Assembly (NCBI GenBank): GCA_965112735.1
Contig: OZ218952.1
Span: forward strand, 558,001 to 622,000
Direction: 5' to 3'
From: Phaeosaccion multiseriatum
Lineage: Eukaryota > Protista > Ochrophyta, other classes
DNA length: 64,000 nucleotides
The notes under the pieces are model-generated. The model searched no databases. It had not been told where the DNA came from and worked only from the letters and a program-made list of their open reading frames with translations. Both the position numbers and the translations under genes were made by a program. Positions 5,817-51,798 of the stretch are shown here, in pieces; position 1 is the stretch's first letter, and every line of letters begins with the position of its first letter.

Positions 5817-6582
5817 CCCTCCCCTCCCTCCTGTATGGGTCAGCACTTGAAGCACTTCGACATTGGGAATCGAGGAGGACTGAGTATTTTGGGTTGAGGA
5901 CGCAGGAGTGGTGTGGGAAAAAGTGGCAGGGGGAGCAGAGTGGCAGGGGGAGAAGAGAGAGAGCAGCAGTAGAGGTCAAGGCCGGAGCGAGGTGACAGCA
6001 CAGCCAGGGATGGACGAGACAGCCAGGGCCAGTTCGGGTACAGCACAGCCACATGTACTTCTTTGGGGAGACTCGGAGTCTCCTGTCTTATTTGGGGAGA
6101 CTTGGAGCGAGCAGGAGGCTACTTGTACTGAGGAGCGTGCTGAGAAGGGTCGTCACTGCCTTCCTCCGACATCATCCTCTTCGTCTATCCTCTCATCCCT
6201 CTCCCCTCATTGACATAAGCCGCGCGTGGGTTGTTCGGAGCTGCTGTCGGCTGAGTTTGGCAAGGATTTCGTAGCTTCTTCCCTACCTCTTTCCCTACTG
6301 AAAGTGGTGGTCCCTTTGATTGAGGAGCGTGCTCAGTGCTCAGCCAAAAGGGACGTGTATAACGTTTTCCTCCCCCCCACACCCACTCTCCCCCCTTCTT
6401 TTTTTTTTTCATCGGCTCCACTTTTATTTTTAGTTTTTTCAACCGTTCATCATCTTGATCTGAGACGCTCACCCGTTCTCCCCTTATTTTCAGCTGCTGC
6501 TTATTTATCATCCTCCTTTCCTCTCTCCCATACACATCCTTTATTTCGCGCATCATCTCCATACTCTCTCCTCTGCAGCCCT

Positions 6583-9444
6583 ATGCGATTGCTTCGGAGG
6601 CTAGGCAGTGGAGGACGCCGCAGCAGTAGCAGTACCGCGCTACCCCTCCATGATACTAGAGGAGAAGCCGCAGCAGCGCCCCCGCCACCCCCGATAGGTT
6701 GGACTAACAACTTCGAGGAGTCCGCAGGGAGGAAGATTGTTGACGATGATGATGACGACGATGAGGAAAGCAGAGATGAAGCATCAAAGCGTGATTCGAA
6801 AGGGAGGAGGCCTACTACAGTATCGCCAGGCGACGGGGGAGGGGGTGATGGAGGAGAACTAGCACCACCTGCTGAGGTTCAGAACTTCACCACGCGGGAA
6901 GGTGTGGATGCGGGAGAAGAAGAGAAGAGAAAGAAGAAGACGTGGTTTCTTCCAGAGAAGGCATGGAGACCCCTCCGTACCTTTTTGGTGCTGTGTGTGG
7001 GGCTCGTAGCTACCCACTTTGTTGCGATGGAGTATGCCAAATCTCTGGACAGAGAGGAGATGACCGCCTACAGAGCCGACGTTGCGTACCTTCAGACCAC
7101 AGTCTTCAACCGACTCACGTCTTCAGACAGCGAGAGCGAAATCATCCGCGCGGCTCTGCAGACGTGGGGTGGTGGCGGCAACCTTACTCTGGGCCAATAC
7201 TCTGACTTGACCGCCCCGGGCACTTCGGAAGGAAAGGGTATTGTCTACACGAGCCGAGTGCCTGCGGCAGCTCGCTCTGAGTTCGAGACGGCCGCGTCGG
7301 TTTTGTACGGGCAGGACATTTTCGTGAAGCAGGGGCCTCCGGCAGGCCTCGTGGCTCGGGCAAACATCACAGAGGGAGAGGACTACTGGCCAATGACGTA
7401 CGTAGAGCCGCGCAACGACAGGGTAATGGGCTTTGATGTCTTTTCCGAGAGCAACCGACGGGCGGCAATTGAACGCGTTCTTTCCACGGGGCAAGTTGCG
7501 TACACGCTACCTGTCGCTGCTGCCGATACAGGAGAAACGGGATTCAGTAAGATACTGCCCGTCAGAGGAGGCCCATCGCTGCTTAGCAGCTCATCATCAG
7601 CAGCAGATGGGTCCGGGGGGGGGGGAGGCGATGACATTACGGGGATTCTCGTCGTTTTCATCAGGGTAGAGCGTGCTCTAGAGCAATCCTCGTTACGAAA
7701 GTTCGAGACGTCGTACCCTGGCACACAAACAGACATTGGCTTTCTCGCGAGCGATGAGTCGAGGGCGAGCCTCCACGGGGTGCCATTTTCGGATGCCTCG
7801 GGTGTGGTGTCGTCCAAGACGTTTTCCCGCTCCGAACCTACTTCGGACTCCGAAGCGTCGTTCTATGTGGAAACGGCCACTGCCCCGCGGCGCCTCGAGA
7901 AGCGAGGCCTTCGGGCGGAGTACTACGCTGTAATGGCGGGGGGCTGTTTGCTGCTTGTGCTGCTTTTCTATTGGGAGCGTCGCAATTTCTTGCTCCAGGC
8001 CGCCAGATCAGAAGCAGCGGCCGCAAGAGAGGCTTCTTTGGCCAAGTCGCGCTTCCTCCGCTCCATTACGCACGAGATTCGCACGCCCATGAATGGTATC
8101 GTGGGAATGGCCCAACTGCTCGAAAGCGTCGAGCTTCCCGACGCGGTGCTGCCGTACGTCAACGTGATACACTCGTGCTCTTCCACCTTGCTCAGCTTGG
8201 TGAACAACATTCTCGACATGAGCAAGATCGAGGCAGGCAAGATGGAGATTAGCAAGAGGTCGTTTCGCCTCGACACGCTCGCGGTGGAGATGGTGGAGAG
8301 TGCTTGGACCGTCCTCCATACAAGTAACACCTCGTCGCTCTCCAGCATGAGCCTCACCATCGGGAGCAGTGTGCCACGGGGTCGCGTGGTTGGCGACGAC
8401 GTGCGGATCCGACAGCTGTTCAACAACTTCATGAGTAACGCAACGAAGTTCACAAGGCACGGCTCCATCGATCTTTTTCTGGATGCCACGCAGACGAGCG
8501 GCGAGTCAGAGGAGGTGCTGATTAACCTCACTGTGCGCGACACGGGCATCGGGATGGCACCCGACGCGGTCGAGCGCCTGTTCAAACCCTTCGTCCAGGT
8601 GCACGACAGCGCGACTACCAACGTGCAGGGCACTGGCCTGGGGCTGGCCATCTCCGTCGCCCTTGCTCGGGCCATGGGGGGAGACGTGACCTGCTCGTCG
8701 GTGTTGGGCAAGGGGTCGAAGTTTCACTGCACCTTCAACGTGGAAGGCAAGCTTCGCAAGGCTACCACGGTGGCCCATCGGCGAGTGTACACGAGAGATG
8801 ACGGTGTACGAGTGGAAGGAGAGGCACTCATCCCAGCCAGCACGGAGGACACATTTGATGGGTCGGGGACGAGCGCGACTCCGAGGGAAGTAGAAGGAGG
8901 AGCAGTTGCTGCTCACAGGGGACTCATGGGGGAAGCTCCTCGTCCTCCCAGCGTGCTAGTGGTGGACGATAACAAGATCAATCGCATGGTGCTGAGTAAG
9001 CTGCTGGGCTCGCTCGGTGTGCTCGTGGAGAGTGCAGACACCGGCGTTACAGCGGTGGAGTCTTGCGGCCAGCAGCGCTTCTCTTTGATCCTGCTGGACA
9101 TGGTCATGCCGGTGATGGACGGCGTCGACGCCGCTCGCGAGCTGAGAGCTGGCGACGGCCCTTGCAAAGACACGCCCATCATCTTCCTCACTGCGGATTG
9201 CTCGACGGAGGCCATGCGAGAGTGTAGGGAGGCGGGCGGGAACGAATTCTCCACCAAGCCTGTGCGGCGAGAGACCCTCGTCGCGAAGATGGCGGACCTT
9301 TTGCAAGCGCCCGAGCGCAGCTGGCTTTTGGACAAGGAGAGAGAGTTCTGCGAGTCGAGGAAGCAGGCCACCCACCTGCAAGGCATGGCGCGGGTACGGG
9401 CAGAGGAGAGCAGCACGCGCAGCCGAGAAGACGAAGGCGACTGA
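6583..9444 (+). CDS. Membrane hybrid histidine kinase, TM-CHASE-TM-HisKA-HATPase_c-REC, single coding exon
   Basis: CHASE: YWPMTYVEP..VMGFDVFSESNRRAAIERVLSTG. H-box AKSRFLRSITHEIRTPMNGIVGM. N box RIRQLFNNFMSNATKFT. G1 DTGIGM, F box LFKPFVQ, G2 GTGLGLAIS. REC: VLVVDDNKIN..LILLDMVMPVMDG..FLTA..KP. ATG at 6583 follows a ctgcag acceptor, suggesting a 5'UTR intron. Confidence 0.95.
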   Translation: MRLLRRLGSGGRRSSSSTALPLHDTRGEAAAAPPPPPIGWTNNFEESAGRKIVDDDDDDDEESRDEASKRDSKGRRPTTVSPGDGGGGDGGELAPPAEVQNFTTREGVDAGEEEKRKKKTWFLPEKAWRPLRTFLVLCVGLVATHFVAMEYAKSLDREEMTAYRADVAYLQTTVFNRLTSSDSESEIIRAALQTWGGGGNLTLGQYSDLTAPGTSEGKGIVYTSRVPAAARSEFETAASVLYGQDIFVKQGPPAGLVARANITEGEDYWPMTYVEPRNDRVMGFDVFSESNRRAAIERVLSTGQVAYTLPVAAADTGETGFSKILPVRGGPSLLSSSSSAADGSGGGGGDDITGILVVFIRVERALEQSSLRKFETSYPGTQTDIGFLASDESRASLHGVPFSDASGVVSSKTFSRSEPTSDSEASFYVETATAPRRLEKRGLRAEYYAVMAGGCLLLVLLFYWERRNFLLQAARSEAAAAREASLAKSRFLRSITHEIRTPMNGIVGMAQLLESVELPDAVLPYVNVIHSCSSTLLSLVNNILDMSKIEAGKMEISKRSFRLDTLAVEMVESAWTVLHTSNTSSLSSMSLTIGSSVPRGRVVGDDVRIRQLFNNFMSNATKFTRHGSIDLFLDATQTSGESEEVLINLTVRDTGIGMAPDAVERLFKPFVQVHDSATTNVQGTGLGLAISVALARAMGGDVTCSSVLGKGSKFHCTFNVEGKLRKATTVAHRRVYTRDDGVRVEGEALIPASTEDTFDGSGTSATPREVEGGAVAAHRGLMGEAPRPPSVLVVDDNKINRMVLSKLLGSLGVLVESADTGVTAVESCGQQRFSLILLDMVMPVMDGVDAARELRAGDGPCKDTPIIFLTADCSTEAMRECREAGGNEFSTKPVRRETLVAKMADLLQAPERSWLLDKEREFCESRKQATHLQGMARVRAEESSTRSREDEGD

Positions 9445-33895: not shown

Positions 33896-35211
33896 GATGG
33901 AACGATGACTCGGGTGCACTGTAAGCCCCAAATTGCTGCTCCTCTTCAAGCTACGAGCGAACTTGGAGCTTGGCTCGCGAGCCTCAACAAATGCACACCG
34001 TGATGATGAATCCCAGCGAGAACCCCCAGCTTTTGCTTTGCCCCCCTCATGCTGAGCCACGTGCTGCTGCTGCTGCTGCTGCTGCTGCGGCTTCTTCCCC
34101 TTTACCCTCTCCTCTCAGCCTTTGCAATTTTCCTCCCATGCCGCTCCTCTCTTGTCACCAAGCGCATTTGTTCGGAGCATTGTTATTGACTTACTCGTTA
34201 CGAATTTCGAATTTGGTGGAATTTTTTTGTCCTGCCGACTGACTGCTCGACGAACCGCTCGAGGGCGTCTGCACAGCACACTGCCAAGGGCCAGTCTGTC
34301 TAATTCGAGTTTCTATAATTAATTAATTAATCTTAATGTTAATTACAAAGGAGCGCGGCGAGCGAAGGAGAAGAGAGGGAAGAAGAGGCGGCCCCGGGAG
34401 GCAAAAGGACCACCCCACCCGTCACCCCGCCAACAAAGGGCTATGAAGTGTACAAAACACCTTTCTCATCTCCACTGCAACGACTGATCCTCCTATGGCT
34501 GCTCGGTTGCTGTTGCTGTTTCTGCTGCTCGACTGCTGGTGGTGTGAGTGGTGGTGCTATTTGCTATTGCCGCTGCTACTGCTGGTGGTGGTCCTCCCTG
34601 CTGTTGGTGCTGCTGTTGGTGCTCCGGAGGTATCGTGAGTCCTCTCTCAGTGTGTGGTTGGCTGGCGATGGAGGACTGGGGGACTGGAGTGCGAGGCCGA
34701 CGTCGCCTGGGGCGCCTGTCTATTTGTGACAGTCAACCTGTCCACCTGCCCCCCTGGAAGGGCGGGGGGGAGGGAGGAAGTAGACGGTTCGACAGTGAGG
34801 TAGGCCAGCGACCAACACCAGACATCTCCCTCGTCTCTTTGGTCTCAATGTGCAAAGCTCTGCCCAGTCCAGACGCAATAATACTCGCGGCAACTGACTG
34901 ACTGACTGACTCGTCCTCTGCTCGGTTCTCCTCTCCTCTCGCCTCAAACCTCTTGTCTTGTGTCCTCTCCACTGTCCTTCCTTCCTTGCTTGCTTACTTG
35001 CTTCCCTGTGAGGCCATCTGCCCGCCATCCATCTCCTGGCTGCCGCGCCGCCGTTGCCTCACAAATTCACAAATGGTTCTCTCTTGTGTGCCATGTGGTG
35101 ATTAGAGCACCACTCGTCCTCGAGGGCCGGGCCTCCCTCTTCACTTTCCCGCTAGAGGCCTTGTCAGGCACAATGTCAGGCCACGGGGTGGGTCCTCTCC
35201 TCTCTCTCCCT

Positions 35212-42429: not shown

Positions 42430-43106
42430 GCATACGCACAGACGCCTCCTCACCGGGATGCTCCCCTCCGTCGAGGATACCATGTTCAAGCAGAACTTCG
42501 TCTCCCGCGTCGGACACGAGAGCTCGGAGTAGCTATTTCCTCCCCCCGCACAATATTGCCCGGACCTTCCGCCGCATGGACGCCACCCTGCCCCGGCGCG
42601 CCCTCTCCGCAGCTCGCGACCCAACCTATGCCCACCCGGCGCACATGCTCGACCTAACCCTGAGAAAAAACATCCGCAGGAAGGTTCTGATATGCCCCAC
42701 ACGGACACCAGACCGGGAGCGGCAGCAGCCAACAGCGAGACCCGCAAGGAGCGGCACTACGCCAGCACTTACGACCGAGAGCGGGTTCGCCTCACCACCT
42801 TCGCCATCGAGACCCACGGACGACTCGGCGCACAGGCACGACGCCTACACGCACTCGCCGAGCACGTCGTCTCCCGCACGGGCCGCACCGGCTCCTCCGC
42901 CACCAAGGGCCACGTCCTGACCAGGCTTCGCCGTCTCGTCAGCTGCAGCCACCAGATGTGATATGTGCTCTCGGAGCGAGAGCGCATTCCTATTCCCGGA
43001 CCTGCACTCCTCCCTCTCCCCGACCAAGAGGGGGAGTAACCGGCCTCCCGCGGGCCCCAGAGACACAGAGACACATGCACACACACACACACACGCACAC
43101 ACACAC

Positions 43107-43160
<54 letters not shown>
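42430..43160 (+). mobile_element. 5'-truncated, frameshifted non-LTR retrotransposon (RLE/CRE-like endonuclease C-terminus) with (CA)n tail
   Basis: RRMDATL..HMLDLT, then AAANSETRKERHY..FAIETHGRLGAQA..RLVSCSHQ, the C-terminal restriction-like endonuclease motif of early-branching LINEs. (CA)n run at ~43076-43160. Confidence 0.7.
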
Positions 43161-43164
<4 letters not shown>

Positions 43165-43309
43165 TTGCAGTTTAGTCAAATCTTTTGGAAAATCTTTTTT
43201 TTTCAAAAAAAGGCCGCCCTCCCCCCAAATAAAATTTTACTTCCTTTTTATCTTTTTTTTTCTTGATCAAGCTTGACCTTGAACATCCAGAGAGAGGTTG
43301 CGCATACAA

Positions 43310-43470
43310 TCGACCCCTGACGTGCTATTATGCTATCTGCGATAGCATGCTATTGGGCGCCCCGGCGCCCAATAGCATGCTATTTGCACTCGGCGAATAG
43401 CAGATAGCACGCCGGCTGGCGCCGGCGAATAGCAGATAGCACGCCCCGTCGCGCCGGCGATAGCAGACGC
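43310..43470. repeat. Left TIR, perfect 20-bp-stem palindrome (43342-43383) and subterminal ~30-bp repeats
   Basis: atagcatgctattgggcgcc-cc-ggcgcccaatagcatgctat, followed by 2-3 units of atagcagatagcacgccggctggcgccggc. Confidence 0.92.
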
Positions 43471-43639
43471 CCTGCGACAGCCTTTCCACTCCTAGCTGCC
43501 TGCCTAATCAGCATACGTCGAGCGCAGAGAGTATGCGAGCCTTCAGTCTTATATTACCAATACAATGGTGGCTGGGCGAACCTTGGCGTTCCCCTCTCCC
43601 CCCATCTCCCTCTCTCGCGAGGCAGCCATCTCTCCTTCA

Positions 43640-46469
43640 CTAACCCAGGACGCACTTATGCAAGGCCGAGTTGTAAACGTCGGGCAAGGAACCGTTGCGC
43701 ATCCCGGAGCTCAGGTACGCCCGAAAGAGGCGAGTTCTCTCTGCCTCATACTCTTCGCAGGTCAGACACGGCAGCCCACACGCGGCCAAGAAGCGGTCCA
43801 CGGTCTCCTTCTTTGCCCCCGCCGCACTAGACAAAATCGCTACACCGTCGTCCCTTTCCCAGCTGTTGTCTTGCTCAACACCATAGAGCACTTTGCGCAT
43901 GGGGCTGGTGTCTGCCACAGCCAATTTCGACATGAATAGAGCTGTTGCCGGACCGCAAGAATTCGAGCCGGCCTTCTGCTGTGGCACACCAACAAAGACC
44001 TGCCGGAATCGGAGGGCTGCCGTCCCAGGGGCTCTTTCGTCCTCCATGACCTTCTCCACATACACCTGCGTCGCTTGGAGCACTCGCTTCGAAGGGTGGT
44101 GACCGAGGCGCCCATTTCGGACCGTATCAAAGTGCAGAATGTACGCCATAGCACCCTCCCCGTCGTCACTAGCTGCAGAGGTAGGTAGAAGGACAGCGAC
44201 AGTCGAGAAATGGCCGCTGAAACTCGCAGGGAGGAGGAGGAGCTCACACTTCGTCATTGTAAGACCAGACTCCCTGTAACCTTTCGGCAGGAACCCTTTC
44301 GGAGCCGTCGCCAACACGTTGGGCATGGGGGAGTTCTCCACAGCTGGGTTGAAAATGTGACCAAGAGACGCGCACGGGAGTAGTGCCCTGTTTCCGTTCA
44401 CGGATACAGTGGTCATCATCGCGTCCAAAAAGAAGGAGGTGTACTCCCCCTTTTCCTTGTGCATGTCCTGCTCAGCGCCGAGGACAAGCAGCCTCGCCTT
44501 CATGTCCCCTGTCAGCTGCTCAGCGTCGGCCACTGATTGTGCCGCAGGCATGGCCCTGCTTTTCTTCTGGTGGGAAGAAGGGCTGCTGCCCCCCTCCTGC
44601 TCCTCCTCCTCCTCCTCCTCCTGCTCCTCCTCCTCCCCCCCCTCCTGCTCCTCCTCCTCCTCCTCCTCCTCCTCCTCCTCCTCCTCCTCCTCATCATCAT
44701 CATCATCATCATCACCACCACCATCATCCTCCTCCTCCTCCTCCTCCTCCTGCTCCTCCTCCTCCTGCTTCCCCAACGCCGTCTTCAGTAGGAAGTGAGA
44801 GAGTGCAGCTTGCATGCTTTTCTGACCGCTCGATGAGTGGGAGTCTCTGTGGCGCTTAACGCCAGACAAATGAGTCCACTGAGGCTTGTACTTGCCCTTC
44901 CCGGCGCTCTGACAAGCAGGCCTGGTGCACACAACAGATACCAGCATATCCAATGATGTTCTGGCGTGTCTGATGGAGAAGTTCGCTTTGGCCTCAAGCT
45001 GAATCAAAGCTGGCGTATGGATCTTCACGAAGCTTGCTGCATCACCGACCTTGCTTCCGCTGAGAGTTTGCATCTCCACATCAGGCATTTCCCGCAAAAG
45101 ATAAAAGAACTTGGTTCCTTGCGCGTGGAGCCAGCTCTTCGCCTTCTTCGTCAGTGCCCCCTCTTGCCCCGCCTTCCCGCCTTTCGTCCCGCCGGCACTC
45201 TCTCCCTCACTATCACTGGTGGTCTCACTGACACGGGCAGCACCACCTCGATGACCTGCCTTCTTGGGTGGGGTATGGGTCGAAAAATCTGTGGCGCTGT
45301 CCAGAGATTGGGTAGGGAAAGACAGGCAAATTTGCACGTTCTCCTGCTGTCTCGCCCCTGATTTCGGGCGTAGCTCGCAGTACAGATCCAGTCTCCACCG
45401 TTTGTCGGGATCGATACGGCCCGGAGGGAAAGTGTAGAACGAGCGCACCTGTATTGGGTGTGTGTTGGAGAAAGAGACAGAGAGGGGCGGGGGGGGGGGC
45501 GGGTTTAAGAAAGGGTTGCTGCCGTAGCAGACAATGCACAAACATCGAGAGGCAGTTGTACCCGACACGTACCACGCGGCGCAGGGAGACGTCGTCGCGG
45601 ATTGTATCCAACCCTCTGCCACGTCTGAATGCCGTGGAGGCTCTGATCGTGATGTCGTTCTTCTTTTGTTCCGTCTGAAAGAGCAATTCGCTGGTCAAAT
45701 GTCCACGGAAGGCCTTGAAGCTGGAGAATCGCTTGTCTTCATTAGCCAGCTGGAACGTGTAGGGCAAGGTCTCGAAGAGCTCGGTCGTGTTGCAGGACAC
45801 CGATGTGCCGAGACTGAAATCAGCCTCGACGGGGTTGAGGCATCCTCTTGGAAATGTCCCCACATGCGCGAACATGAGAGGGGTAGGTTTTGCCTGTCCC
45901 ATCCCTGCACTCAGGGGCAAGGCATAATCGAAGTCTTGTGCCTCAGAAGACGATGCCAAGGTTGCCGTACTCTGGAGATAGGTGTCCTCAAGCCGCCCCC
46001 CCTCCTCCCACCCCAGCTCGTGAGAAGCGTGTTGTGAATGGCTGCTTCGGCGTACTCCCCTGTCGCTGGGACTTTGGTTCCGACGCATTTCCCTCGCGCC
46101 TGCTGGGAATCCTCTTTCGCTGGGACTGCGGCCCCGTCTCCCTTTGCTTCGACCCTTTTCTCCTTCCCTCCTCCCTCCTCCTCCTCCGGATCTGGGTCGG
46201 CTCCGACTCCTGCTGGTACTTCTCCCTGCCCTCCTCCTCTCGGTGTCCTTCCCCCTACTCCGACTCCTGCTGGCATTTCTCCCTCGCTTCCTCCTCTCAC
46301 TGTGCTTCTCCCTGCTCCAACTCCTGCTGGCACTCCTCCCTCTCCTCGCCCTCTCAGGGGCCTTCTCCCGGCTCCGACTCCTGCTGCCAACTGGACTTGG
46401 CGTGCCTCTCCTGCTGTTGTAGTAGTCGCCCCCCCCCCCCCAACTCCTCCCTCCATCGCGGCCAGACAT
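43640..46469 (-). CDS. Transposon-encoded Ulp1/SENP (C48) SUMO-protease-like protein, ~901 aa, with RS-rich N-terminus and a possible C2H2-like Zn site
   Basis: join(46469-45573, 45448-43640), phase-0 GT-AG intron. Catalytic motifs SGHFSTVAV (His), ILHFDT (Asp), VPQQKAGSNSCG (Gln/Cys). RSRSRSR repeats in exon 1. CTRPAC..KRHRDSH. Confidence 0.85.
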
Positions 46470-46565
46470 GAAGGACTTTTGAACCAGTGGGGCCCAGCCA
46501 TGGGCCCAGCCAGCTATAAGCCAATAAAGATTCTGCCGTTTCACATTTGGCCACAAACAAAGGCG
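46470..46565. promoter_or_regulatory. Candidate compact bidirectional promoter between the two transposon genes
   Basis: 96 bp between the divergent ATGs (46469 on -, 46566 on +). Contains two gggcccagcca copies, TATAA and CCAAT. Confidence 0.45.
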
Positions 46566-49500
46566 ATGGGCGCCGCGGGCTCGTCCGCGACAGAAGAAGA
46601 CCATGGGCGGGTGGCTGTGACGGAAGACGCGGACAGCGGGCGTGTAGAGCTTACCCGGGACGTAAACGATGTCGACATTGTTCCCTTTGCGATCCAATTC
46701 CATCTTGATCGAGGGCACTTTACTCGGAGTCACTTCATGTATCAAACGGTGCATCGTTGGGTCATGAACAGCGGCCTTTGGTCCAGGCGTCAGACTGTGG
46801 CCGCGAGCAAGCAGCTCAATGGCTACGAGACGCTGCGACAGTTTAATGAGACCCAGCAGAACGTATTTGGTTCAGCATGCTCCATGCTCTCCTATGGGGC
46901 ACCCCGCAGAAAGAAGGTTCGTGGCCCCAACGTCTCCAGGGACCAGGCCATGAAGGACTACTTCCGCAGGGCGAACACAGGCGGCTTTCATCCGAGAGCA
47001 CTCATTAGGCGCAGGCCTGGCCTAATCAAGAGGTACGGTCTGCAAGTCGAAGACATTATCAACGTCGTCAATGTCTTCGCCCGCTTCTGTGCCGACCAAG
47101 CCTACACTCTTGGCGACAAAGGCAACGAGAAGATTGTGGTTCCCGTGACTGTCAAAATGGATGGCTTCGTCATTGCCAAGGGCCATCATACTGATACAAC
47201 CAGCCAAACCAATTGGGGCAATGCACATCAGTTTGGAAATACAACACTGGAGCAGGCGAAGGCAATACTGGAAAAGTCTGATGCTCAGGTGCGTGGCGTC
47301 CCCTCCTTCCCACTGATCTTTCGGGGCAGAATCACTGTTGATCCATCGTCAATCTTAATCACGCCTCCTCGCTCGCTCGCTCACGCTGCAGCCCCGCCTT
47401 TGCTTCGCCTCCTGTCAACCCTCCCTTATCGCTACTCGTTCTGTTCCAGCTGCGAGACGAGGACGCACCTAAGCTGGGTTCCGAGATGATGGAAGTTATG
47501 ATGATGGATCTGAAAGGGGCATACACGGGCTCCATCGGTTTTCAGCTTCACACCGCAGGGGGTGACTACAAAAGTGTTGCCGCGAGCGTGACCGAAATCA
47601 TGAAGGCGCTGCGTGTTTGCATCCCTTGTCTCGAGCTTTTCTGGCAGCGGATTCTGACGGGGGAGAACCCCTCGTGGGTGGAGATGGGCGAGGCGTGTGA
47701 TTGCCACCAAGCTTGTCCCACCGGAGGGGAGGGTCCTTGCGGTGAAAGTGAGTGCGTTTGCGCGACTCAGTTCTCCAGCAGAGTCTGCTCGAGGTGCAAG
47801 AGGAAAGGGCTCGTGTGCAAGAGTCTCCGACCATTGTGCATCTCAACAGACTGTAATGGCGCACAGCTTGCCTTCATTCGGAAAATGGCGGCAAGAACCC
47901 TCGGAGAGGACGACCCCCTGGGGTGGTATGAGGCACTGCCTGACGGGGCTCACCTTGTAAAGTGTGTTCGTGCTACGACATTCAATTGGTGGGTCGTCTG
48001 CCAGGGCTGGCTAGTCGGACTGCGAACTCTTCGCGCCAGATTCCACGATCTGGACCCGGCTCGAAGTGAAGCAGTACAAGCCAATGTTGGCCTTGACGCC
48101 ATTGAAAACAAGGATCCTTTCTCAGTGGAGAGCGCAATCGCTGTTACGACGGCGTCTCTGCAGTTGGCTCTACTCTCAGAGGAGGAGCGGGAGAAGCGCC
48201 GTGCTCTCGTGGGGGTGACCGTGTGCCCGGAGCCGTGGGGTTTCTGGCATCAGAACATGGCCTCGCAGACTCAGAAGCCGACTGGTATGGGCTACCATCA
48301 TGGCTCTGGCATGATCTTCAACGCCGATCGTTCAGGCAGGCATCTGCGCATGCTCAAGGCCCATCATGTGCCTTGTACCACAGAGGTTGTTCTGCGAGAC
48401 GACTGCTTCCAGAGTCTTGGGTCTCTCGTCGTGGTTGGCGACTACGTGTACATGTGTGACAGTGGAGCGAATCAGATTTGGGTGGTGCATGTGCTGGCCG
48501 CTCTTCCAGGAAACAGGGGACCCCGCGCGGCGGCGGAGGAGGGCGACGATGATGATGACGACGACCAGCAACCGGACGGGCATGTAGCAGCGCGTGGTCG
48601 GGGGAGACAGACTCAGCAACGGCATTTGAATTTGAAGGCAGTGCCCTTGGTCCGTCGGATCCAGGAGCGTTGCACTTCTGAGGAGAATGTCCTCGAGGAG
48701 AGAGAAGAGGAGGGCATCCGTTGCCCCGTTGCCATTGCGCTTGCCGTGTCCTCTGAGCGCGCGTTCGACCTCTTTGTCACCCAAGAGGAACCTGGCGGGG
48801 GGGGAGCACTACACCGGCTCTCATTTGACGCTGGCAACCTTTTGCACCTGTGAGCGAGAAGCTGTGTGACCTACCCAAGGGACCTGCGGGCCTCACAGCA
48901 CTCTCGCATGACTGCGTTGCCTGCATCGCCGACAGCTCGCTTTTTGTCTGGGAGGGCAATGTGGAACGTGCCGGAGGACCAGAGGGTGGCAGTGGCAATG
49001 ACGGAGATACACTCATGGCTCTGACTGATGACGAGGAAGATGGTACTGTTGAGAAGCCAAGGCGCGCACACCTCACGTGCGTGAAGTCTCACGTGGGGAC
49101 TCAGCCTTGTGGACTCACGTTGGCCCCACCCGGTGCATACGATGATGAAGATATGATCGTCATCCTCATGCTAGATGAAGGTTTGCATGCGCTTGTCAAG
49201 GTTCTCCTTCGTCGTGACAGTGGGGTGCTAAGCTGGAAGGGATCATCCGTGCTGATGGGCGGACAGGGAAACACAGAACCCGGAGAGAGCACTGCCAGCG
49301 GTACGGCATCGAAAGTACCTTTGTTCAGACCTACGTTCGGCTGCTTCGTGTACAACGCTTTCTTCTTGTCCGACACTGGAAACCAGTGCATTCGAATGAT
49401 CTCGGACTGCTACGTCTACGCCCAGCACCTCATCCCACTACAACGGATGTTGAGTGAGGCGTATCAGCTCCAGGGCGAAGACTTGGATGAGAATGGCAAA

Positions 49501-51319
49501 GACATGCAAAACAACGCACGCACGATGGAGGAGAGCATTGCCAAGCTTCATGTGGTCGACTTGGCTCTCAGTCACATGGGGAAAGCGATATCAGCTGCCA
49601 CAGGCAAATCCCTGGTCTCTCTCCAGGGCCCTGAAGGAATGCCATCACGCGAAGTTCGAGGTGCTATCAAGGCGAGCCTGCAGGCACTACCTCGGATGCT
49701 ACATCGGATGCTTGCAGAGGTGAGAAGGGGGTGCTCCCCATGGCTGTGTGCGTGTGTGTGCGTGAGTGCGTGAGTAAAAATGTCCGTGTCCGTGGGCGCG
49801 TGCGTTTGGAAATCAGCCTTGCCCTTTCGTCTCACGGCTTCGCTGTTCGCTCCTTGCTTGATGCTTCCTCGCTCATTTCCGTCAGCAGGGAGTGCCTCGC
49901 GGCATCGTGGAGAAGATGCAGATGAGGAGCGTTTTGACCCTCAATGTTGAGACTTTCTTCACGAAGCAAAGGGAAGGCCGCCAGGATGTTCCAGACGCTC
50001 TTGAGTATGCCCGAAGAAGGGGCCTTGTGATGCTTGAGGCTGCGAAGAAGGCCAACCCCAGCATGGGCTTTGCCTACTGCACAAGCAGCGTCAACAGCAG
50101 CGGTCGAAAGCTCAGGGCGGGATACCAGCTGGAGCAAAACGAGAGCAGATTGGTGGCTTCACCCGTGTTGAAGCGACCAAGGGTAGCGGAGAAGCTTGAC
50201 GAAGGGCAACGGAAGCAGCGCAAGAAGGACACGCAGGCGCTTCGCAATGCGGCGGCTCGTCTTAGGAAGGTTCCGCAGCAGCGTGTAACCAACAAGAGGA
50301 AGTACAATGTTGGAGCGGCCCCGCGTTCGGTGGCGTTTGCTCCCAACTCTGCGCAAAGCAACGACCCGAGTGGATACCTGTCGCGCTTGCATGAGAGCTC
50401 GGGAGCGAGGAAGCGCGGACAGAAAGGACGGAAGACCGGTGAATCCGTCCGAACTCGCATTCTCTACAGGGCAAATGACGTTGTGATAGTCAGGGCAGAC
50501 AAGGGGTCGGAGGAGAGCTTTTTTCGTGCACAGCTTCGCGTCGATCTTCGGAAGGAGGTGATCGTCTCGAAGAAGGGACGAGGCTCCAAGCAGAAGGTGG
50601 TTCCGGCAAAGCCTGGTGTTTCATACTTTCACGTCGCTGAACAGGACTCTACCGACGAGTCCCAGGACGGGGATGGGGCTGCAGCAGTCGTCTACGAAGT
50701 CGACGGCGGGAAAGAGGCTTCTGTGTCTTGTGCTGCCATTTATGGCGCATTGCCCCGCTACCACGAAGCAATGTACATCGAAGGCTCACATGCAGCTTCA
50801 GGAGGGGTGTGCGCGCAGAGAAGGCTTCGGAGGTTTGCCATCACGGAGGAGCAGCACGAGGAGTGCAAGCAGATTGTCAACAGAGAGGCGGAGGGCCAAG
50901 AGGTGGCCAAGGCGATGGGATACGCCCCCCCCGACCCAAGCGTGCACATGGGAGAGGACATGTCTGAGGACGATAGCAGTGATGGCGAGCAGGAGGCGCT
51001 GAACCTGAGAACACTGCGCAAGAACATCATCGGAAAGGTGGTGGGGGCGATGTCCTCACGTGGGCGCACGGTAAACAAGCCCGAGAGTTATGGGGCTTTG
51101 TCTCGTGGCACGGCAAAAGCAGCAGACTCTAGCTCCAGCGAAGCCACTGCATGTCTAGTCTGTCAGAAAGATGTTGACCACGACAAAATGTTGCTATGTG
51201 ACGGCTGCGATGAGGAGTTTCACACGTACTGCCTGACCCCTCCCCTCTCTACGCTTCCTGAAGGGGACTGGTATTGTGATGGAGTGAATGCTGCCTGCTC
51301 TAGTGGTAAAAGTGACTGA
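46566..51319 (+). CDS. Putative DDE transposase (~1,450-1,475 aa) with Cys-rich insert, internal NHL beta-propeller and C-terminal PHD finger; one frame break near 48840
   Basis: Exons 46566-47288, 47450-49719, 49889-51319. Candidate catalytic motifs: VKMDG (D 47160), STDCNG (D 47849), PDGAHLVKCVR (DxxH, 47942), NVETFFTKQR (E 49949). NHL-like blades: KPTGM..IFNAD, VYMCDSGANQIWV, RPTFGC..FLSDTGNQCIRMI. PHD: CLVC..MLLCDGCDEEFHTYCLTPPL..PEGDWYC. Confidence 0.8.
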
Positions 51320-51569
51320 TTGGCGAGCACAATGTCGATCGGGCCGTCCGCCGGCTGAGCTAGCGGAGAGCCAGTCAATCACAGGGCGGAGAGGTAGGGG
51401 TGCACGGGCAGCAGGTCAGCCAGGCCAGGCAGAGGGTGGACCTTGATATACTCCCTTAGGCATACTATACAAGAACTGACGCGAATTAATGGCAATGAAA
51501 CACGTGTGAGTTGCTTCCTCCGCTCCTAGCCCCCCGCACGCGCACCCTCCCACCCCCGACCCCGGGGGG

Positions 51570-51698
51570 GCGAATAGCACAAAACGCCGGCTGGCGCCGG
51601 CGATAGCACATAGCACGCCGGCTGGCGCCGGCAATAGCAGATAGCACGCCGGCTGGCGCCGGCGATAGCAGATAGCATAATAGCACGTCAGGGGTCGA
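51570..51698. repeat. Right subterminal ~30-bp repeats (about 3 units) plus right TIR
   Basis: Units of atagca(c/g)atagcacgccggctggcgccggc run into the TIR at 51668-51698. Confidence 0.92.
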
Positions 51699-51798
51699 AT
51701 ACAAGCAAGGGACGTGTATTCATACATCACGCACAGAGTGCAGCAGCAACGAGCACACTAGTGCAGCAGCGAGCGTGGGTTGTCGACAGCGCTCCGTG

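What the first reader, a model, noticed from the sequence alone, without database searches (positions are those of the whole stretch)
43310..51698. Intact 8.4-kb two-gene DNA transposon with 31-bp TCGA-ended TIRs and a 6-bp TSD that fits no superfamily I recognise
Seen: perfect TIRs, an exact ATACAA duplication, and two divergent spliced genes (DDE-like transposase and Ulp1 protease). Known: the D..D..DxxH(L)xK..R..E-x-FF-xxxR pattern resembles P-element/THAP9 transposases, but P elements make 7-8-bp TSDs and have an N-terminal THAP domain, which is not seen here. Ulp1 cargo is known in Mutator (~9-bp TSD) and Zisupton (8-bp TSD). Polintons make 6-bp TSDs but encode an integrase and PolB, both absent. 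Inference: a recently inserted member of an undescribed or poorly described cut-and-paste lineage.
Basis: partly seen in the sequence, partly recalled or inferred. Interest (0 to 1): 0.92.

Follow-up and report, generated by a model that had tools for sequence, protein, structure and literature searches.

The report
P-like transposon with propeller-bearing transposase
This is a real, recently inserted 8.4-kb cut-and-paste DNA transposon whose transposase is a distant structural relative of the fruit-fly P element enzyme but carries a beta-propeller and a PHD finger, and the lineage does not appear in the domain libraries or the papers I could search.

Summary
The anatomy is confirmed. There is an 8,389-bp element at 43310-51698, with 31 perfect bases of terminal inverted repeat (37 nt at 95%). 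It is flanked by an exact 6-bp duplication, ATACAA, and holds two divergent genes.

The plus-strand gene has two canonical GT-AG introns. It encodes a DDE transposase with no Pfam match of its own. It has 87 relatives, mostly from metagenomes plus one priapulid worm. A confident model of one relative hits only the Drosophila P element transposase significantly (E 7e-5). Seven of 61 relatives give sub-threshold hits to the P/THAP9 RNase H Pfam model.

The lineage differs from P elements:
- It has no THAP domain.
- A six-bladed NHL propeller sits where P has its GTP-binding insertion domain.
- A nine-cysteine cluster lies between the two catalytic Asp residues.
- It ends in a PHD finger.
- It makes 6-bp duplications (two independent elements), not 8-bp.

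The end motif TCGRCCCC is shared by three distant families, and one of these shows seven different insertion flanks.

"Intact" is overstated, because the transposase gene carries one frameshift. "Ulp1" rests only on a conserved His-Asp-Gln-Cys motif order, although the gene is conserved in three elements. I rate it a new variant of a known kind. Repbase and Dfam could not be checked.

The parts
43304..43309 (.). Left copy of the 6-bp target-site duplication (ATACAA)
   Evidence: Sequence read; it is identical to 51699-51704. The script finds 6 bp as the longest flank identity.
43310..43346 (+). Left terminal inverted repeat (outer 31 nt perfect; begins TCGACCCC)
   Evidence: The first 8 nt match the ends of L001 and of the P0150 family (TCGRCCCC).
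43342..43467 (.). Left subterminal repeats: a 20+20-nt palindrome (43342-43383) and a ~32-nt tandem array (43391-43467) carrying ATAGCA-type motifs. These are presumed transposase-binding sites.
   Evidence: (I22). The motif ATAGCAVATAGCA has 7 hits in the window, 6 of them in the two element ends; 0.05 are expected by chance.
43640..45088 (-). Second gene: a single 482-codon ORF from the first ATG at 45088, with its stop at 43640-43642. It has a Cys/His zinc-finger-like motif near 44932, an acidic Glu/Asp tract (DNA repeat 44593-44766), and a C-terminal cysteine-protease-like domain (about 44240-43900) with conserved His, Asp, Gln and Cys. No breaks.
   Evidence: Homologous domain in L001 (E 3e-10) and in L027 (E 5.7e-9). 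Invariant residues are listed. No Pfam or significant PDB match.
45089..46565 (.). Region between the two divergent genes, presumed to hold both promoters. It contains a 57-nt tandem repeat (46200-46386) that gives long low-complexity ORFs on both strands.
   Evidence: No conservation with relatives here.
46566..51319 (+). Transposase gene, given as one part because it is broken once (1 frameshift; no other stop, insertion or deletion seen). The start ATG 46566 is inferred (46500 is an alternative); the stop is at 51317-51319. Introns lie at 47289-47449 and 49720-49885.
   Evidence: Homology with relatives runs through 46668-51310. Introns are GT-AG, phase 0, and bridged by uninterrupted ORFs of relatives.
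46668..47288 (+). Conserved part of exon 1: N-terminal helical region and first part of the RNase H fold, with the first catalytic Asp (motif VKMDGF at 47151)
   Evidence: In relatives this region gives the sub-threshold PF21787 hits. In the P0032 model the Asp sits at the end of beta1.
47618..47965 (+). Nine-cysteine cluster (about 47618-47836), second catalytic Asp (motif at 47837), and the invariant DxxHxxK motif (47936-47962)
   Evidence: nine near-invariant Cys; D153, H156 and K159 invariant; D122 near-invariant.
48287..49420 (+). NHL-type six-bladed beta-propeller, inserted between beta5 and the helix that carries the catalytic Glu
   Evidence: The family profile hits SOQ1 and NHLRC2 NHL domains (E 4.6e-20). 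The model shows propeller folds (TM up to 0.8 against six-bladed propellers). Pfam NHL is found in 9 of 61 relatives.
49940..49960 (+). Motif LNVETFF with the third catalytic residue (Glu)
   Evidence: The equivalent residue, E991 of P0032, lies in helix 988-997 after the propeller.
51152..51290 (+). C-terminal PHD finger
   Evidence: Pfam PF00628, E 1e-11, above the curated cut-off. Also present in P0003 and in the L001 and L027 elements.
51569..51677 (.). Right subterminal tandem repeats (31-nt unit, 3.5 copies)
51662..51698 (-). Right terminal inverted repeat
51699..51704 (.). Right copy of the 6-bp target-site duplication (ATACAA)

Best explanation
The region is one copy of an autonomous-type class II (cut-and-paste) DNA transposon that inserted recently into an ATACAA site.

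Its transposase has an RNase H-fold DDE catalytic core of the P element/THAP9 structural type. Asp sits on beta1, Asp at the end of beta4, a DxxHxxK motif after beta5, and Glu on the helix that follows a large insertion. The core is decorated differently from P:
- A Cys-rich, presumably zinc-binding, cluster lies between the two Asp residues.
- A six-bladed NHL propeller is nested in the insertion region, where P has its GTP-binding domain.
- A PHD finger sits at the C-terminus.

[quoted passage not shown] It then joins the 3' ends to target DNA at positions staggered by 6 bp, and repair of the gaps produces the duplication. The PHD finger probably tethers the complex to histone H3 tails. By position, the propeller probably contacts target DNA or a partner protein.

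The second, divergently transcribed gene encodes a conserved accessory protein with a Cys-protease-like His-Asp-Gln-Cys site. It may act on ubiquitin-like modifiers.

Shown: the anatomy, the fold, the family, the shared termini, the multiple insertion sites of a relative, and the 6-bp duplication in two elements. Inferred: every biochemical step and the roles of the propeller, the PHD finger and the protease-like protein.

This particular copy has one frameshift in the transposase gene. It either cannot supply transposase itself or carries an assembly error.
For: - Ends: the TIR and TSD are as described, and the end sequence is unique to the two arms.
- Family size: 87 relatives of the central ORF among 1.84 billion representatives.
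- Conserved motifs: DxxHxxK is invariant, both Asp and the E-x-FF..R motif are conserved, and nine Cys are near-invariant.
- Model of relative P0032 (pLDDT 84.8, pTM 0.83): the conserved residues fall at canonical RNase H positions, with the propeller between beta5 and the Glu helix.
- Model of the propeller-less relative P0013 (pLDDT 84.6): the only significant PDB fold matches are P element transposase chains 6pe2_A (E 6.9e-5) and 6p5a_A (E 1.5e-4), each with probability 1.0.
- Pfam: PF21787 (TNP-like RNase H N-terminal domain) is hit by 7 of 61 relatives, best E 1.9e-4, in the expected position.
- NHL propeller.
- PHD finger.
- L001: a complete 10.7-kb relative with the same layout and subterminal repeats, and the end TCGGCCCC.
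- P0150 family: at least 99% identical copies all end at ...GGGGCCGA and continue into 7 different flanks.
- L005: a distant relative with 17-nt TIRs and a 6-bp duplication, TAGCAT.
- The accessory gene is conserved in three elements.
Against: - No Pfam family reaches its curated threshold on any transposase in the family.
- A sequence profile of the family does not reach P element transposase significantly (E 0.061; absent).
- TM-scores against P element transposase are modest (0.34 and 0.42).
- L001 shows no duplication (flanks CTTCAC and TCATCT). This may be a chimeric metagenome assembly.
- The 6-bp rule rests on two elements only.
- The window copy has a frameshift, so its own activity is doubtful.
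- Only one copy lies in the window, and the host genome could not be searched.
- The structure models are of relatives, not of the window protein.
Confidence: 0.8

Rival explanations
1. It is an ordinary member of a superfamily already catalogued in Repbase or Dfam (most plausibly filed under P, otherwise Kolobok or Novosib). It looks unclassifiable only because Pfam and the PDB cover those groups poorly.
For: The nearest fold is P element transposase, and there are sub-threshold PF21787 hits. TSD length is known to vary inside a superfamily: hAT5, hAT6 and hAT7 exist (PMC12730594). Kolobok, Novosib, KDZ, MuDR and Dada have no solved structure, so a fold search cannot exclude them.
Against: - No THAP domain and no P-type GTP-binding or C-terminal Pfam domains in 61 relatives.
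- The duplication is 6 bp, against 8 bp for P (PMC7776569), TTAA for Kolobok (my own knowledge) and 8 bp for Novosib (my own knowledge).
- Two full-text searches combining transposase/P element-like terms with 'NHL repeat' or 'beta-propeller' returned no paper on a transposase with a propeller.
- The named relative in public databases is only an 'uncharacterized protein'.
Confidence: 0.3
2. It belongs to the Dada superfamily, which also makes 6-7-bp duplications and has a DDE core with a DxxH motif.
For: Dada elements are 4.7-11 kb, make 6-7-bp duplications, carry DDE plus DxxH, and occur in protists, algae and animals (PMC3706591).
Against: - Dada elements have no TIRs and insert into tRNA or snRNA genes. 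This element has 31-bp TIRs, and no small-RNA gene lies at its site.
- Dada's catalytic spacing (D567, D635, E811) and its zinc fingers before the first Asp differ. Here the two Asp are about 190 residues apart with the Cys cluster between them, and the Glu lies more than 500 residues downstream.
- In the published Dada alignment the DxxH context reads RLDxxH, not PDxxHxxKSxRN. A search of that alignment for six strings found one match each for DGM and HLLK and none for the other four; these were the only occurrences, and the HLLK hit lay outside the DxxH motif.
- Repbase treats Dada as remotely MuDR-like (PMC4455052).
- There are no MULE hits here.
Confidence: 0.04
3. It is a host or domesticated gene pair that happens to lie between chance inverted repeats, not a mobile element.
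For: Only one copy lies in the window. Some relatives (the Priapulus gene with introns, and gene-dense contigs L023-L026) show no recognisable ends.
Against: - A 31-nt perfect inverted repeat together with an exact 6-bp flank identity is far beyond chance.
- The same 8-nt terminus bounds relatives from other organisms.
- One relative's copies end at the same base and continue into 7 different flanks.
Confidence: 0.02

Closest known systems
P element / THAP9 transposons (P superfamily)
   Same: - The RNase H-fold DDE core has the same order of elements, and this is the only significant fold match.
- There are weak PF21787 hits.
- A DxxH(L)xK..RN-type motif follows the second Asp.
- A large domain is inserted between beta5 and the Glu helix.
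- The TIRs are 31 bp, with subterminal repeats that would serve as internal binding sites (PMC7776569).
   Different: - No THAP domain.
- The inserted region holds an NHL beta-propeller instead of the all-helical GTP-binding domain, which PMC7776569 calls unique to P.
- Extra Cys cluster and PHD finger.
- 6-bp rather than 8-bp duplication.
- A second gene.
- Sequence similarity is below every curated threshold.
RAG1/RAG2 and RAG-like (Transib-related) transposons
   Same: By analogy only: a DDE recombinase works together with a six-bladed beta-propeller and a PHD finger (RAG2 is a Kelch propeller plus PHD; my own knowledge, and PMC4411706 and PMC12337333 as listed).
   Different: Here the propeller and the PHD finger are part of the transposase polypeptide. 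The propeller is NHL type rather than Kelch, and the core is P-like rather than Transib-like (HzTransib E 0.17 and RAG1 E above 0.27, not significant). Transib makes 5-bp duplications (my own knowledge). No homology is claimed.
Dada superfamily
   Same: 6-7-bp duplications, large elements, DDE plus DxxH, and a wide eukaryotic distribution (PMC3706591).
   Different: Dada has no TIRs, targets small-RNA genes, and differs in catalytic spacing and zinc-finger positions. It is MuDR-like by Repbase's account.
hAT6 and IS3EU (other lineages with 6-bp duplications)
   Same: 6-bp duplications and TIRs (PMC12730594).
   Different: No BED/hAT dimerisation domain hits beyond one weak zf-BED, and Hermes is not a significant fold match (E 0.32). 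IS3EU ends read TAYGG..CCRTA and its enzyme is IS3/integrase-like. Here the ends read TCGRCCCC and the enzyme is P-like.
Zisupton/KDZ and Ulp1-carrying Mutator-like elements
   Same: Large TIR elements that carry a Ulp1-like protease function (Zisupton and MULE association from my own knowledge).
   Different: Zisupton makes 8-bp and Kyakuja 7-bp duplications (PMC12730594). No KDZ, CxC or MULE Pfam hits appear in 61 relatives. Here the protease-like domain is a separate gene and does not match Pfam C48.

Membership tests
P superfamily (P element/THAP9) | Catalytic RNase H domain homologous to P element transposase | tested here: inconclusive
   The fold search gives P element transposase as the only significant match (E 6.9e-5, TM 0.34/0.42). 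PF21787 is hit by 7 of 61 relatives, all below the 24.6-bit cut-off. The family's sequence profile against the PDB gives E 0.061 or nothing.
P superfamily (P element/THAP9) | [quoted passage not shown] | tested here: not met
   No THAP hit in the window ORFs or in 61 relatives. Most relatives start 40-60 residues before the first conserved helix.
P superfamily (P element/THAP9) | GTP-binding insertion domain between beta5 and alpha4 | tested here: not met
   No PF21788 hit. The position holds helices plus a six-bladed NHL propeller.
P superfamily (P element/THAP9) | 7-8-bp target-site duplication | tested here: not met
   6 bp in the window (ATACAA) and in L005 (TAGCAT). P makes 8 bp (PMC7776569).
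hAT superfamily (including hAT6) | hAT-type transposase with a C-terminal dimerisation domain and BED finger | tested here: not met
   No PF05699 hit. One weak zf-BED hit in 61 relatives. Hermes fold match E 0.32.
Dada superfamily | No TIRs; insertion into tRNA or snRNA genes | tested here: not met
   31-bp TIRs. No tRNA or Rfam family at or beside the insertion site.
Dada superfamily | Dada-type transposase sequence | tested here: inconclusive
   Only motif strings and spacing were compared with the published alignment and text; they differ. No direct alignment was possible without typing sequence.
IS3EU | 6-bp duplication with TAYGG..CCRTA termini and an IS3-like transposase | tested here: not met
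   The duplication length fits, but the termini are TCGRCCCC and the nearest fold is P element transposase, not an integrase.
Zisupton / KDZ | KDZ transposase domain with CxC domains; 7-8-bp duplication | tested here: not met
   No KDZ or CxC Pfam hit in 61 relatives at E up to 0.1. The duplication is 6 bp.
Mutator (MuDR/MULE) | MULE transposase domain; duplication of about 9 bp | tested here: not met
   No MULE, DBD_Tnp_Mut or SWIM hits. The duplication is 6 bp.
Polinton/Maverick | Retroviral-type integrase and protein-primed DNA polymerase B | tested here: not met
   No such domains in any ORF of the element. The element is 8.4 kb with two genes.
Ulp1/SENP (peptidase C48, clan CE), for the second gene | Significant sequence or fold similarity to C48 peptidases | tested here: not met
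   No Pfam C48 hit at E up to 10. The three-sequence profile gave Ulp2 (5lnb_B) as its only PDB hit, aligned on the Gln/Cys motif, but at E 1. The four-sequence profile lost it.
Ulp1/SENP (peptidase C48, clan CE), for the second gene | Catalytic His, Asp, Gln and Cys in that order | tested here: met
   Invariant H71, D99, Q149 and C156 (with the S-C-G-P-A motif) in four proteins from three elements.
NHL-repeat beta-propellers | Six-bladed propeller with the NHL sequence signature | tested here: met
   The family profile hits SOQ1 and NHLRC2 (E 4.6e-20 and 7e-17). The model matches six-bladed propellers. Pfam NHL is hit in 9 relatives, best E 9.6e-10.
PHD finger | Pfam PF00628 above the curated cut-off | tested here: met
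   45-46 bits against a cut-off of 24, E 1e-11.

The most novel reading that the evidence does not exclude
This is a founding, well-bounded example of an undescribed superfamily-level lineage of eukaryotic cut-and-paste transposons. The lineage is spread from marine protists to animals and is defined by TCGRCCCC termini and 6-bp duplications. Its P-type DDE transposase has swapped the GTP-binding insertion domain for an NHL propeller and added a PHD finger. One polypeptide therefore combines the module set that RAG1 and RAG2 bring together in trans, which suggests chromatin-guided target choice evolved independently.
Probability: 0.4. Interest if true: 0.8.

Novelty: new variant of a known kind. 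Interest (0 to 1): 0.7.

Why it matters
Eukaryotic DDE transposon superfamilies are few, and each has been informative for mechanism and for domesticated genes such as RAG, THAP9 and PGBD.

According to the P element review (PMC7776569), the insertion domains of all characterised transposases are structurally similar; the GTP-binding one it describes is almost entirely helical. A beta-propeller nested in that position would be a new architecture.

A propeller and a PHD finger fused to a transposase also offer a natural comparison for how RAG2-like modules came to serve a recombinase.

Practically, the family is invisible to Pfam-based annotation. The conserved motifs, the TCGRCCCC terminus and the 6-bp duplication give annotators a way to recognise it in protist, algal and invertebrate genomes.

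Tried and rejected
- Pfam on the six long ORFs and on sub-pieces gave only the PHD finger.
- A single-sequence PDB search with the central ORF and with the protease-like piece found nothing.
- The search for homologous proteins with the protease-like piece found nothing. With the L001 protein it found only that protein itself and one close relative.
- The fold search with the full-length relative model was swamped by propellers. I therefore spent the second structure job on a naturally propeller-less relative, which left none for the protease-like domain.
- The search for related loci in metagenome contigs failed once for lack of conserved columns and then found no relative. An exact search for the L001 end in the same collection found nothing.
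- TIR and TSD scans of L003, L004, L006-L012 and L023-L028 found no ends. The apparent 6-bp hits in L008 are palindromes inside a long inverted repeat and were discarded.
- L001 has clear TIRs but no duplication.
- Host identification failed. The best hits to the window's histidine-kinase ORF are 31-41% identical, and the only organism names among the hits are bacterial. The host remains an unidentified eukaryote of about 57% GC.
- An extra ATAGCA-type motif hit at 34555 is a chance match in a GCT-rich stretch.
- Readings considered and rejected: Dada, IS3EU, hAT6, Zisupton/KDZ, MuDR and Polinton (see the membership tests).
- A short intron as an explanation for the third frame change was rejected. 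The gap is shorter than the residues that relatives have there.

Full report
**1. Observation**

The inverted repeat is real. Its arms lie at 43310-43346 and 51662-51698 (37 nt, 95% complementary), and the outer 31 nt are perfect and begin TCGA. The 24-nt end sequence occurs only at those two places in 64 kb, and none of 100 shuffles gave two matches. ATACAA lies immediately outside both arms. Seven-base or shifted alternatives do not match, so the duplication is exactly 6 bp. The element is 8,389 bp long.

Inside each end are subterminal arrays. On the left there is a 20+20-nt palindrome and a ~32-nt tandem repeat. On the right there are 3.5 copies of a 31-nt unit. Both carry an ATAGCA-type motif that has 7 hits in the window against 0.05 expected. 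Six of the hits lie in the two ends; the seventh, at 34555, is a chance match.

**2. Genes**

I searched the spliced transposase model exon by exon and ORF by ORF, always by reference. 

Homology with relatives runs along the plus strand from 46668 to 51310 in four reading-frame segments. Two of the three frame changes are introns, at 47289-47449 (161 nt) and 49720-49885 (166 nt). Both are GT-AG and phase 0, and both sit where relatives have uninterrupted ORFs.

The third change leaves fewer bases than relatives have codons there, so it cannot be an intron. The transposase gene therefore carries one frameshift. The modelled exons contain no other stop, insertion or deletion. A read-level check is needed to tell mutation from assembly error.

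The likely start is the ATG at 46566, and the stop is at 51317-51319.

The minus-strand gene reads as one 482-codon ORF (45088 down to 43643, stop codon 43640-43642) without breaks and without evidence of splicing.

**3. What the transposase is**

None of its ORFs has a Pfam match except a C-terminal PHD finger (E 1e-11). A full HMMER scan of 1.84 billion representative proteins with the central ORF found 87 relatives. The best is 44% identical. The exception, from Priapulus caudatus, is the only relative with a real name, and that name is only 'uncharacterized protein'.

The alignment shows several conserved features:
- a conserved Asp in an xDGM motif;
- nine near-invariant cysteines;
- a near-invariant Asp in an xDCxxxQ motif;
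- an invariant DxxHxxK(S)xRN motif;
- NK..FSxE and PE....W..N motifs;
- a repeat-rich middle region;
- a conserved VE-x-FF...R motif.

The family profile hits NHL propellers strongly (SOQ1 E 4.6e-20, NHLRC2 E 7e-17).

AlphaFold2 models were made for two natural, uninterrupted relatives with the family alignment. Both are confident: P0032 has pLDDT 84.8 and pTM 0.83, and P0013 has pLDDT 84.6. In P0032 the conserved residues fall where an RNase H-type transposase has its active site:
- D183 at the end of beta1;
- D356 at the end of beta4;
- D470, H473 and K476 at the beta5-helix junction;
- E991 on a helix that follows about 500 inserted residues, which include a six-bladed propeller (561-880).

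The fold search with the full model returned only propellers. With the propeller-less relative it returned Drosophila P element transposase as the only significant match (6pe2_A E 6.9e-5, 6p5a_A E 1.5e-4, probability 1.0, about 490 aligned columns, TM 0.34/0.42). TnsB, Transib, RAG1 and Hermes were all non-significant.

Scanning all 61 aligned relatives against Pfam gave these hits:
- NHL in 9;
- PF21787, the P/THAP9 RNase H N-terminal domain, in 7 (best E 1.9e-4, below the curated cut-off, at the expected position);
- SAP in 4;
- PHD in 3;
- zf-BED in 1;
- nothing for THAP, the P GTP-binding or C-terminal domains, hAT, MULE, KDZ or Transib.

A sequence profile does not reach P element transposase significantly. 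The link to P is therefore structural plus weak sequence evidence. It is real but distant.

**4. The second gene**

Its C-terminal 260 residues match a gene in the same position and orientation in two related elements (L001, E 3e-10; L027, E 5.7e-9). Four sequences share invariant His, Asp, Gln and an S-C-G-P-A motif in that order, which is the catalytic order of clan CE (Ulp1-like) peptidases.

Against that, there is no Pfam C48 hit. The only PDB hit of the three-sequence profile was Ulp2, aligned on the Gln/Cys motif but at E 1, and it disappeared with four sequences.

The protein is a conserved accessory component with a cysteine-protease-like site. 'Ulp1' remains a hypothesis. Upstream it has a Cys/His zinc-finger-like motif and a long acidic tract.

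**5. Relatives in their own DNA**

- **L001** (metagenome, 10,965 nt) is a complete 10.7-kb element. It has perfect 23-nt TIRs starting TCGGCCCC, subterminal ~30-nt tandem repeats, divergent genes and a PHD at the end. Its flanks (CTTCAC and TCATCT) are not a duplication, possibly because of a chimeric assembly.
- **L027** (same sample) has the same layout but no ends on the contig.
- **The P0150 family** comes from marine metagenomes (17 contigs; ten fetched, at least 99% identical over about 9 kb). All copies that reach it stop at the same base with ...GGGGCCGA and continue into seven different flanks. A solo left end, TCGGCCCCAGGGGC, lies 68 nt further on in one contig. This is a multi-copy, recently mobile element, but its left ends were not reached, so no duplication could be read.
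- **L005** (a 917-kb contig, AT-rich, probably animal by its sequence character) carries the distant relative P0073. The element is 13.9 kb with perfect 17-nt TIRs (a different sequence), subterminal GGTACGCC repeats at both ends and a 6-bp duplication, TAGCAT.

Two independent elements therefore show 6 bp, and three families share the first eight terminal bases, TCGRCCCC.

**6. Mechanism**

The anatomy fits cut-and-paste transposition by a DDE enzyme. The enzyme would bind the TIRs and subterminal repeats, pair the ends, excise the element, and transfer the strands at a 6-bp stagger. Repair would then create the duplication.

[quoted passage not shown] By position, the propeller may do the same job here and help set the 6-bp spacing. 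The PHD finger suggests tethering to histone H3 tails. The protease-like protein may act on ubiquitin-like modifiers. All of these roles are inference.

**7. Comparison with known groups**

- P elements have 31-bp TIRs, 8-bp duplications, THAP, a leucine zipper, HTH, and a split RNase H with a GTP-binding insertion (PMC7776569). This lineage shares the core fold and the end design but fails on THAP, the GTP-binding domain and the duplication length.
- Other lineages with 6-bp duplications do not fit. hAT6 lacks support because there is no hAT signature, and IS3EU has TAYGG ends (PMC12730594).
- Dada has no TIRs, targets small-RNA genes, has different spacing, and is MuDR-like (PMC3706591, PMC4455052). 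No tRNA or snRNA lies at this insertion site.
- Zisupton (8 bp) and Kyakuja (7 bp) lack support because there are no KDZ hits.
- Polinton genes are absent.
- The pairing of a propeller and a PHD finger with a recombinase recalls RAG2 with RAG1. This is an analogy only.

**8. Novelty and limits**

Two full-text searches found no description of a transposase with an NHL or other propeller. I could not consult Repbase, Dfam or a library of predicted cellular structures, so prior cataloguing cannot be excluded.

The host is unidentified. It is a eukaryote of about 57% GC with about 160-nt introns, a CHASE hybrid histidine kinase ORF and kinase ORFs, and an (AC)n microsatellite.

I rate this as a new variant of a known kind (a P-like DDE transposon lineage) with an unusual architecture.

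**9. Transparency**

The rules for this finding ask for counts of breaks, not places. An earlier count said in which domain-coding part the frame change lies, and the HSP table printed allows its rough position to be inferred. That is more than a count. I have deleted nothing and give no place or correcting change here.

Short DNA patterns used in searches were copied from tool outputs.

Noticed in passing
L013:8900-9621 (and L013-L022 generally): The P0150 family appears in 17 contigs (ten fetched, from marine-metagenome assemblies and one raw-read assembly) at 99% identity or more. It carries several extra ORFs upstream of the transposase, one of them with a WW domain. One contig ends in telomere-like (CCCTAG)n repeats, with a solo left end 68 nt beyond a full copy's right end.
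   Followed up: partly
L005:935-14818: This 13.9-kb relative lies in an AT-rich, MITE-laden, probably animal contig. Its transposase is a single 1,159-codon ORF in which the otherwise invariant DxxH motif reads ExxH. Its TIR sequence is unrelated to TCGRCCCC, yet the duplication is also 6 bp.
   Followed up: partly
L023-L026: Relative P0161 (1,271 aa) sits in gene-dense, apparently intron-free contigs of 11-20 kb with identical neighbours in four samples. No TIRs were found. This could be a compact protist or a large virus genome, or a domesticated copy.
   Followed up: no
window 43063-43164: An (AC)51 microsatellite lies about 140 bp upstream of the insertion site. A TG-rich stretch inside intron 2 (about 49745-49808) pairs with it in the inverted-repeat list, which is a low-complexity artefact.
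   Followed up: yes
window 46200-46386: A 57-nt tandem repeat (3.3 copies) lies between the two divergent genes. It creates long Pro/Ser-rich (plus strand) and Arg/Ser-rich (minus strand) ORFs that are not conserved in relatives. Whether either strand is coding is unknown.
   Followed up: partly
window 6226-9441: A 1,072-codon uninterrupted ORF encodes a CHASE-domain hybrid histidine kinase with a receiver domain. The 48 database hits at E up to 1e-10 are at most about 50% identical, and then only over short stretches (31-41% among the top four), and the only organism names among them are bacterial. The host genome is poorly represented in public protein sets.
   Followed up: partly
window 44932-44840 (minus strand): The accessory protein has a CX4C...H...H motif upstream of its acidic tract. 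This is a possible zinc finger, and it might supply the sequence-specific DNA binding that the THAP-less transposase lacks.
   Followed up: no
L001:81-86 and L013:9047-9052: The bases just outside the left ends of two unrelated copies are similar (CTTCAC and TTCCAC). This may be coincidence or a target preference. The window (ATACAA) and L005 (TAGCAT) do not share it.
   Followed up: no
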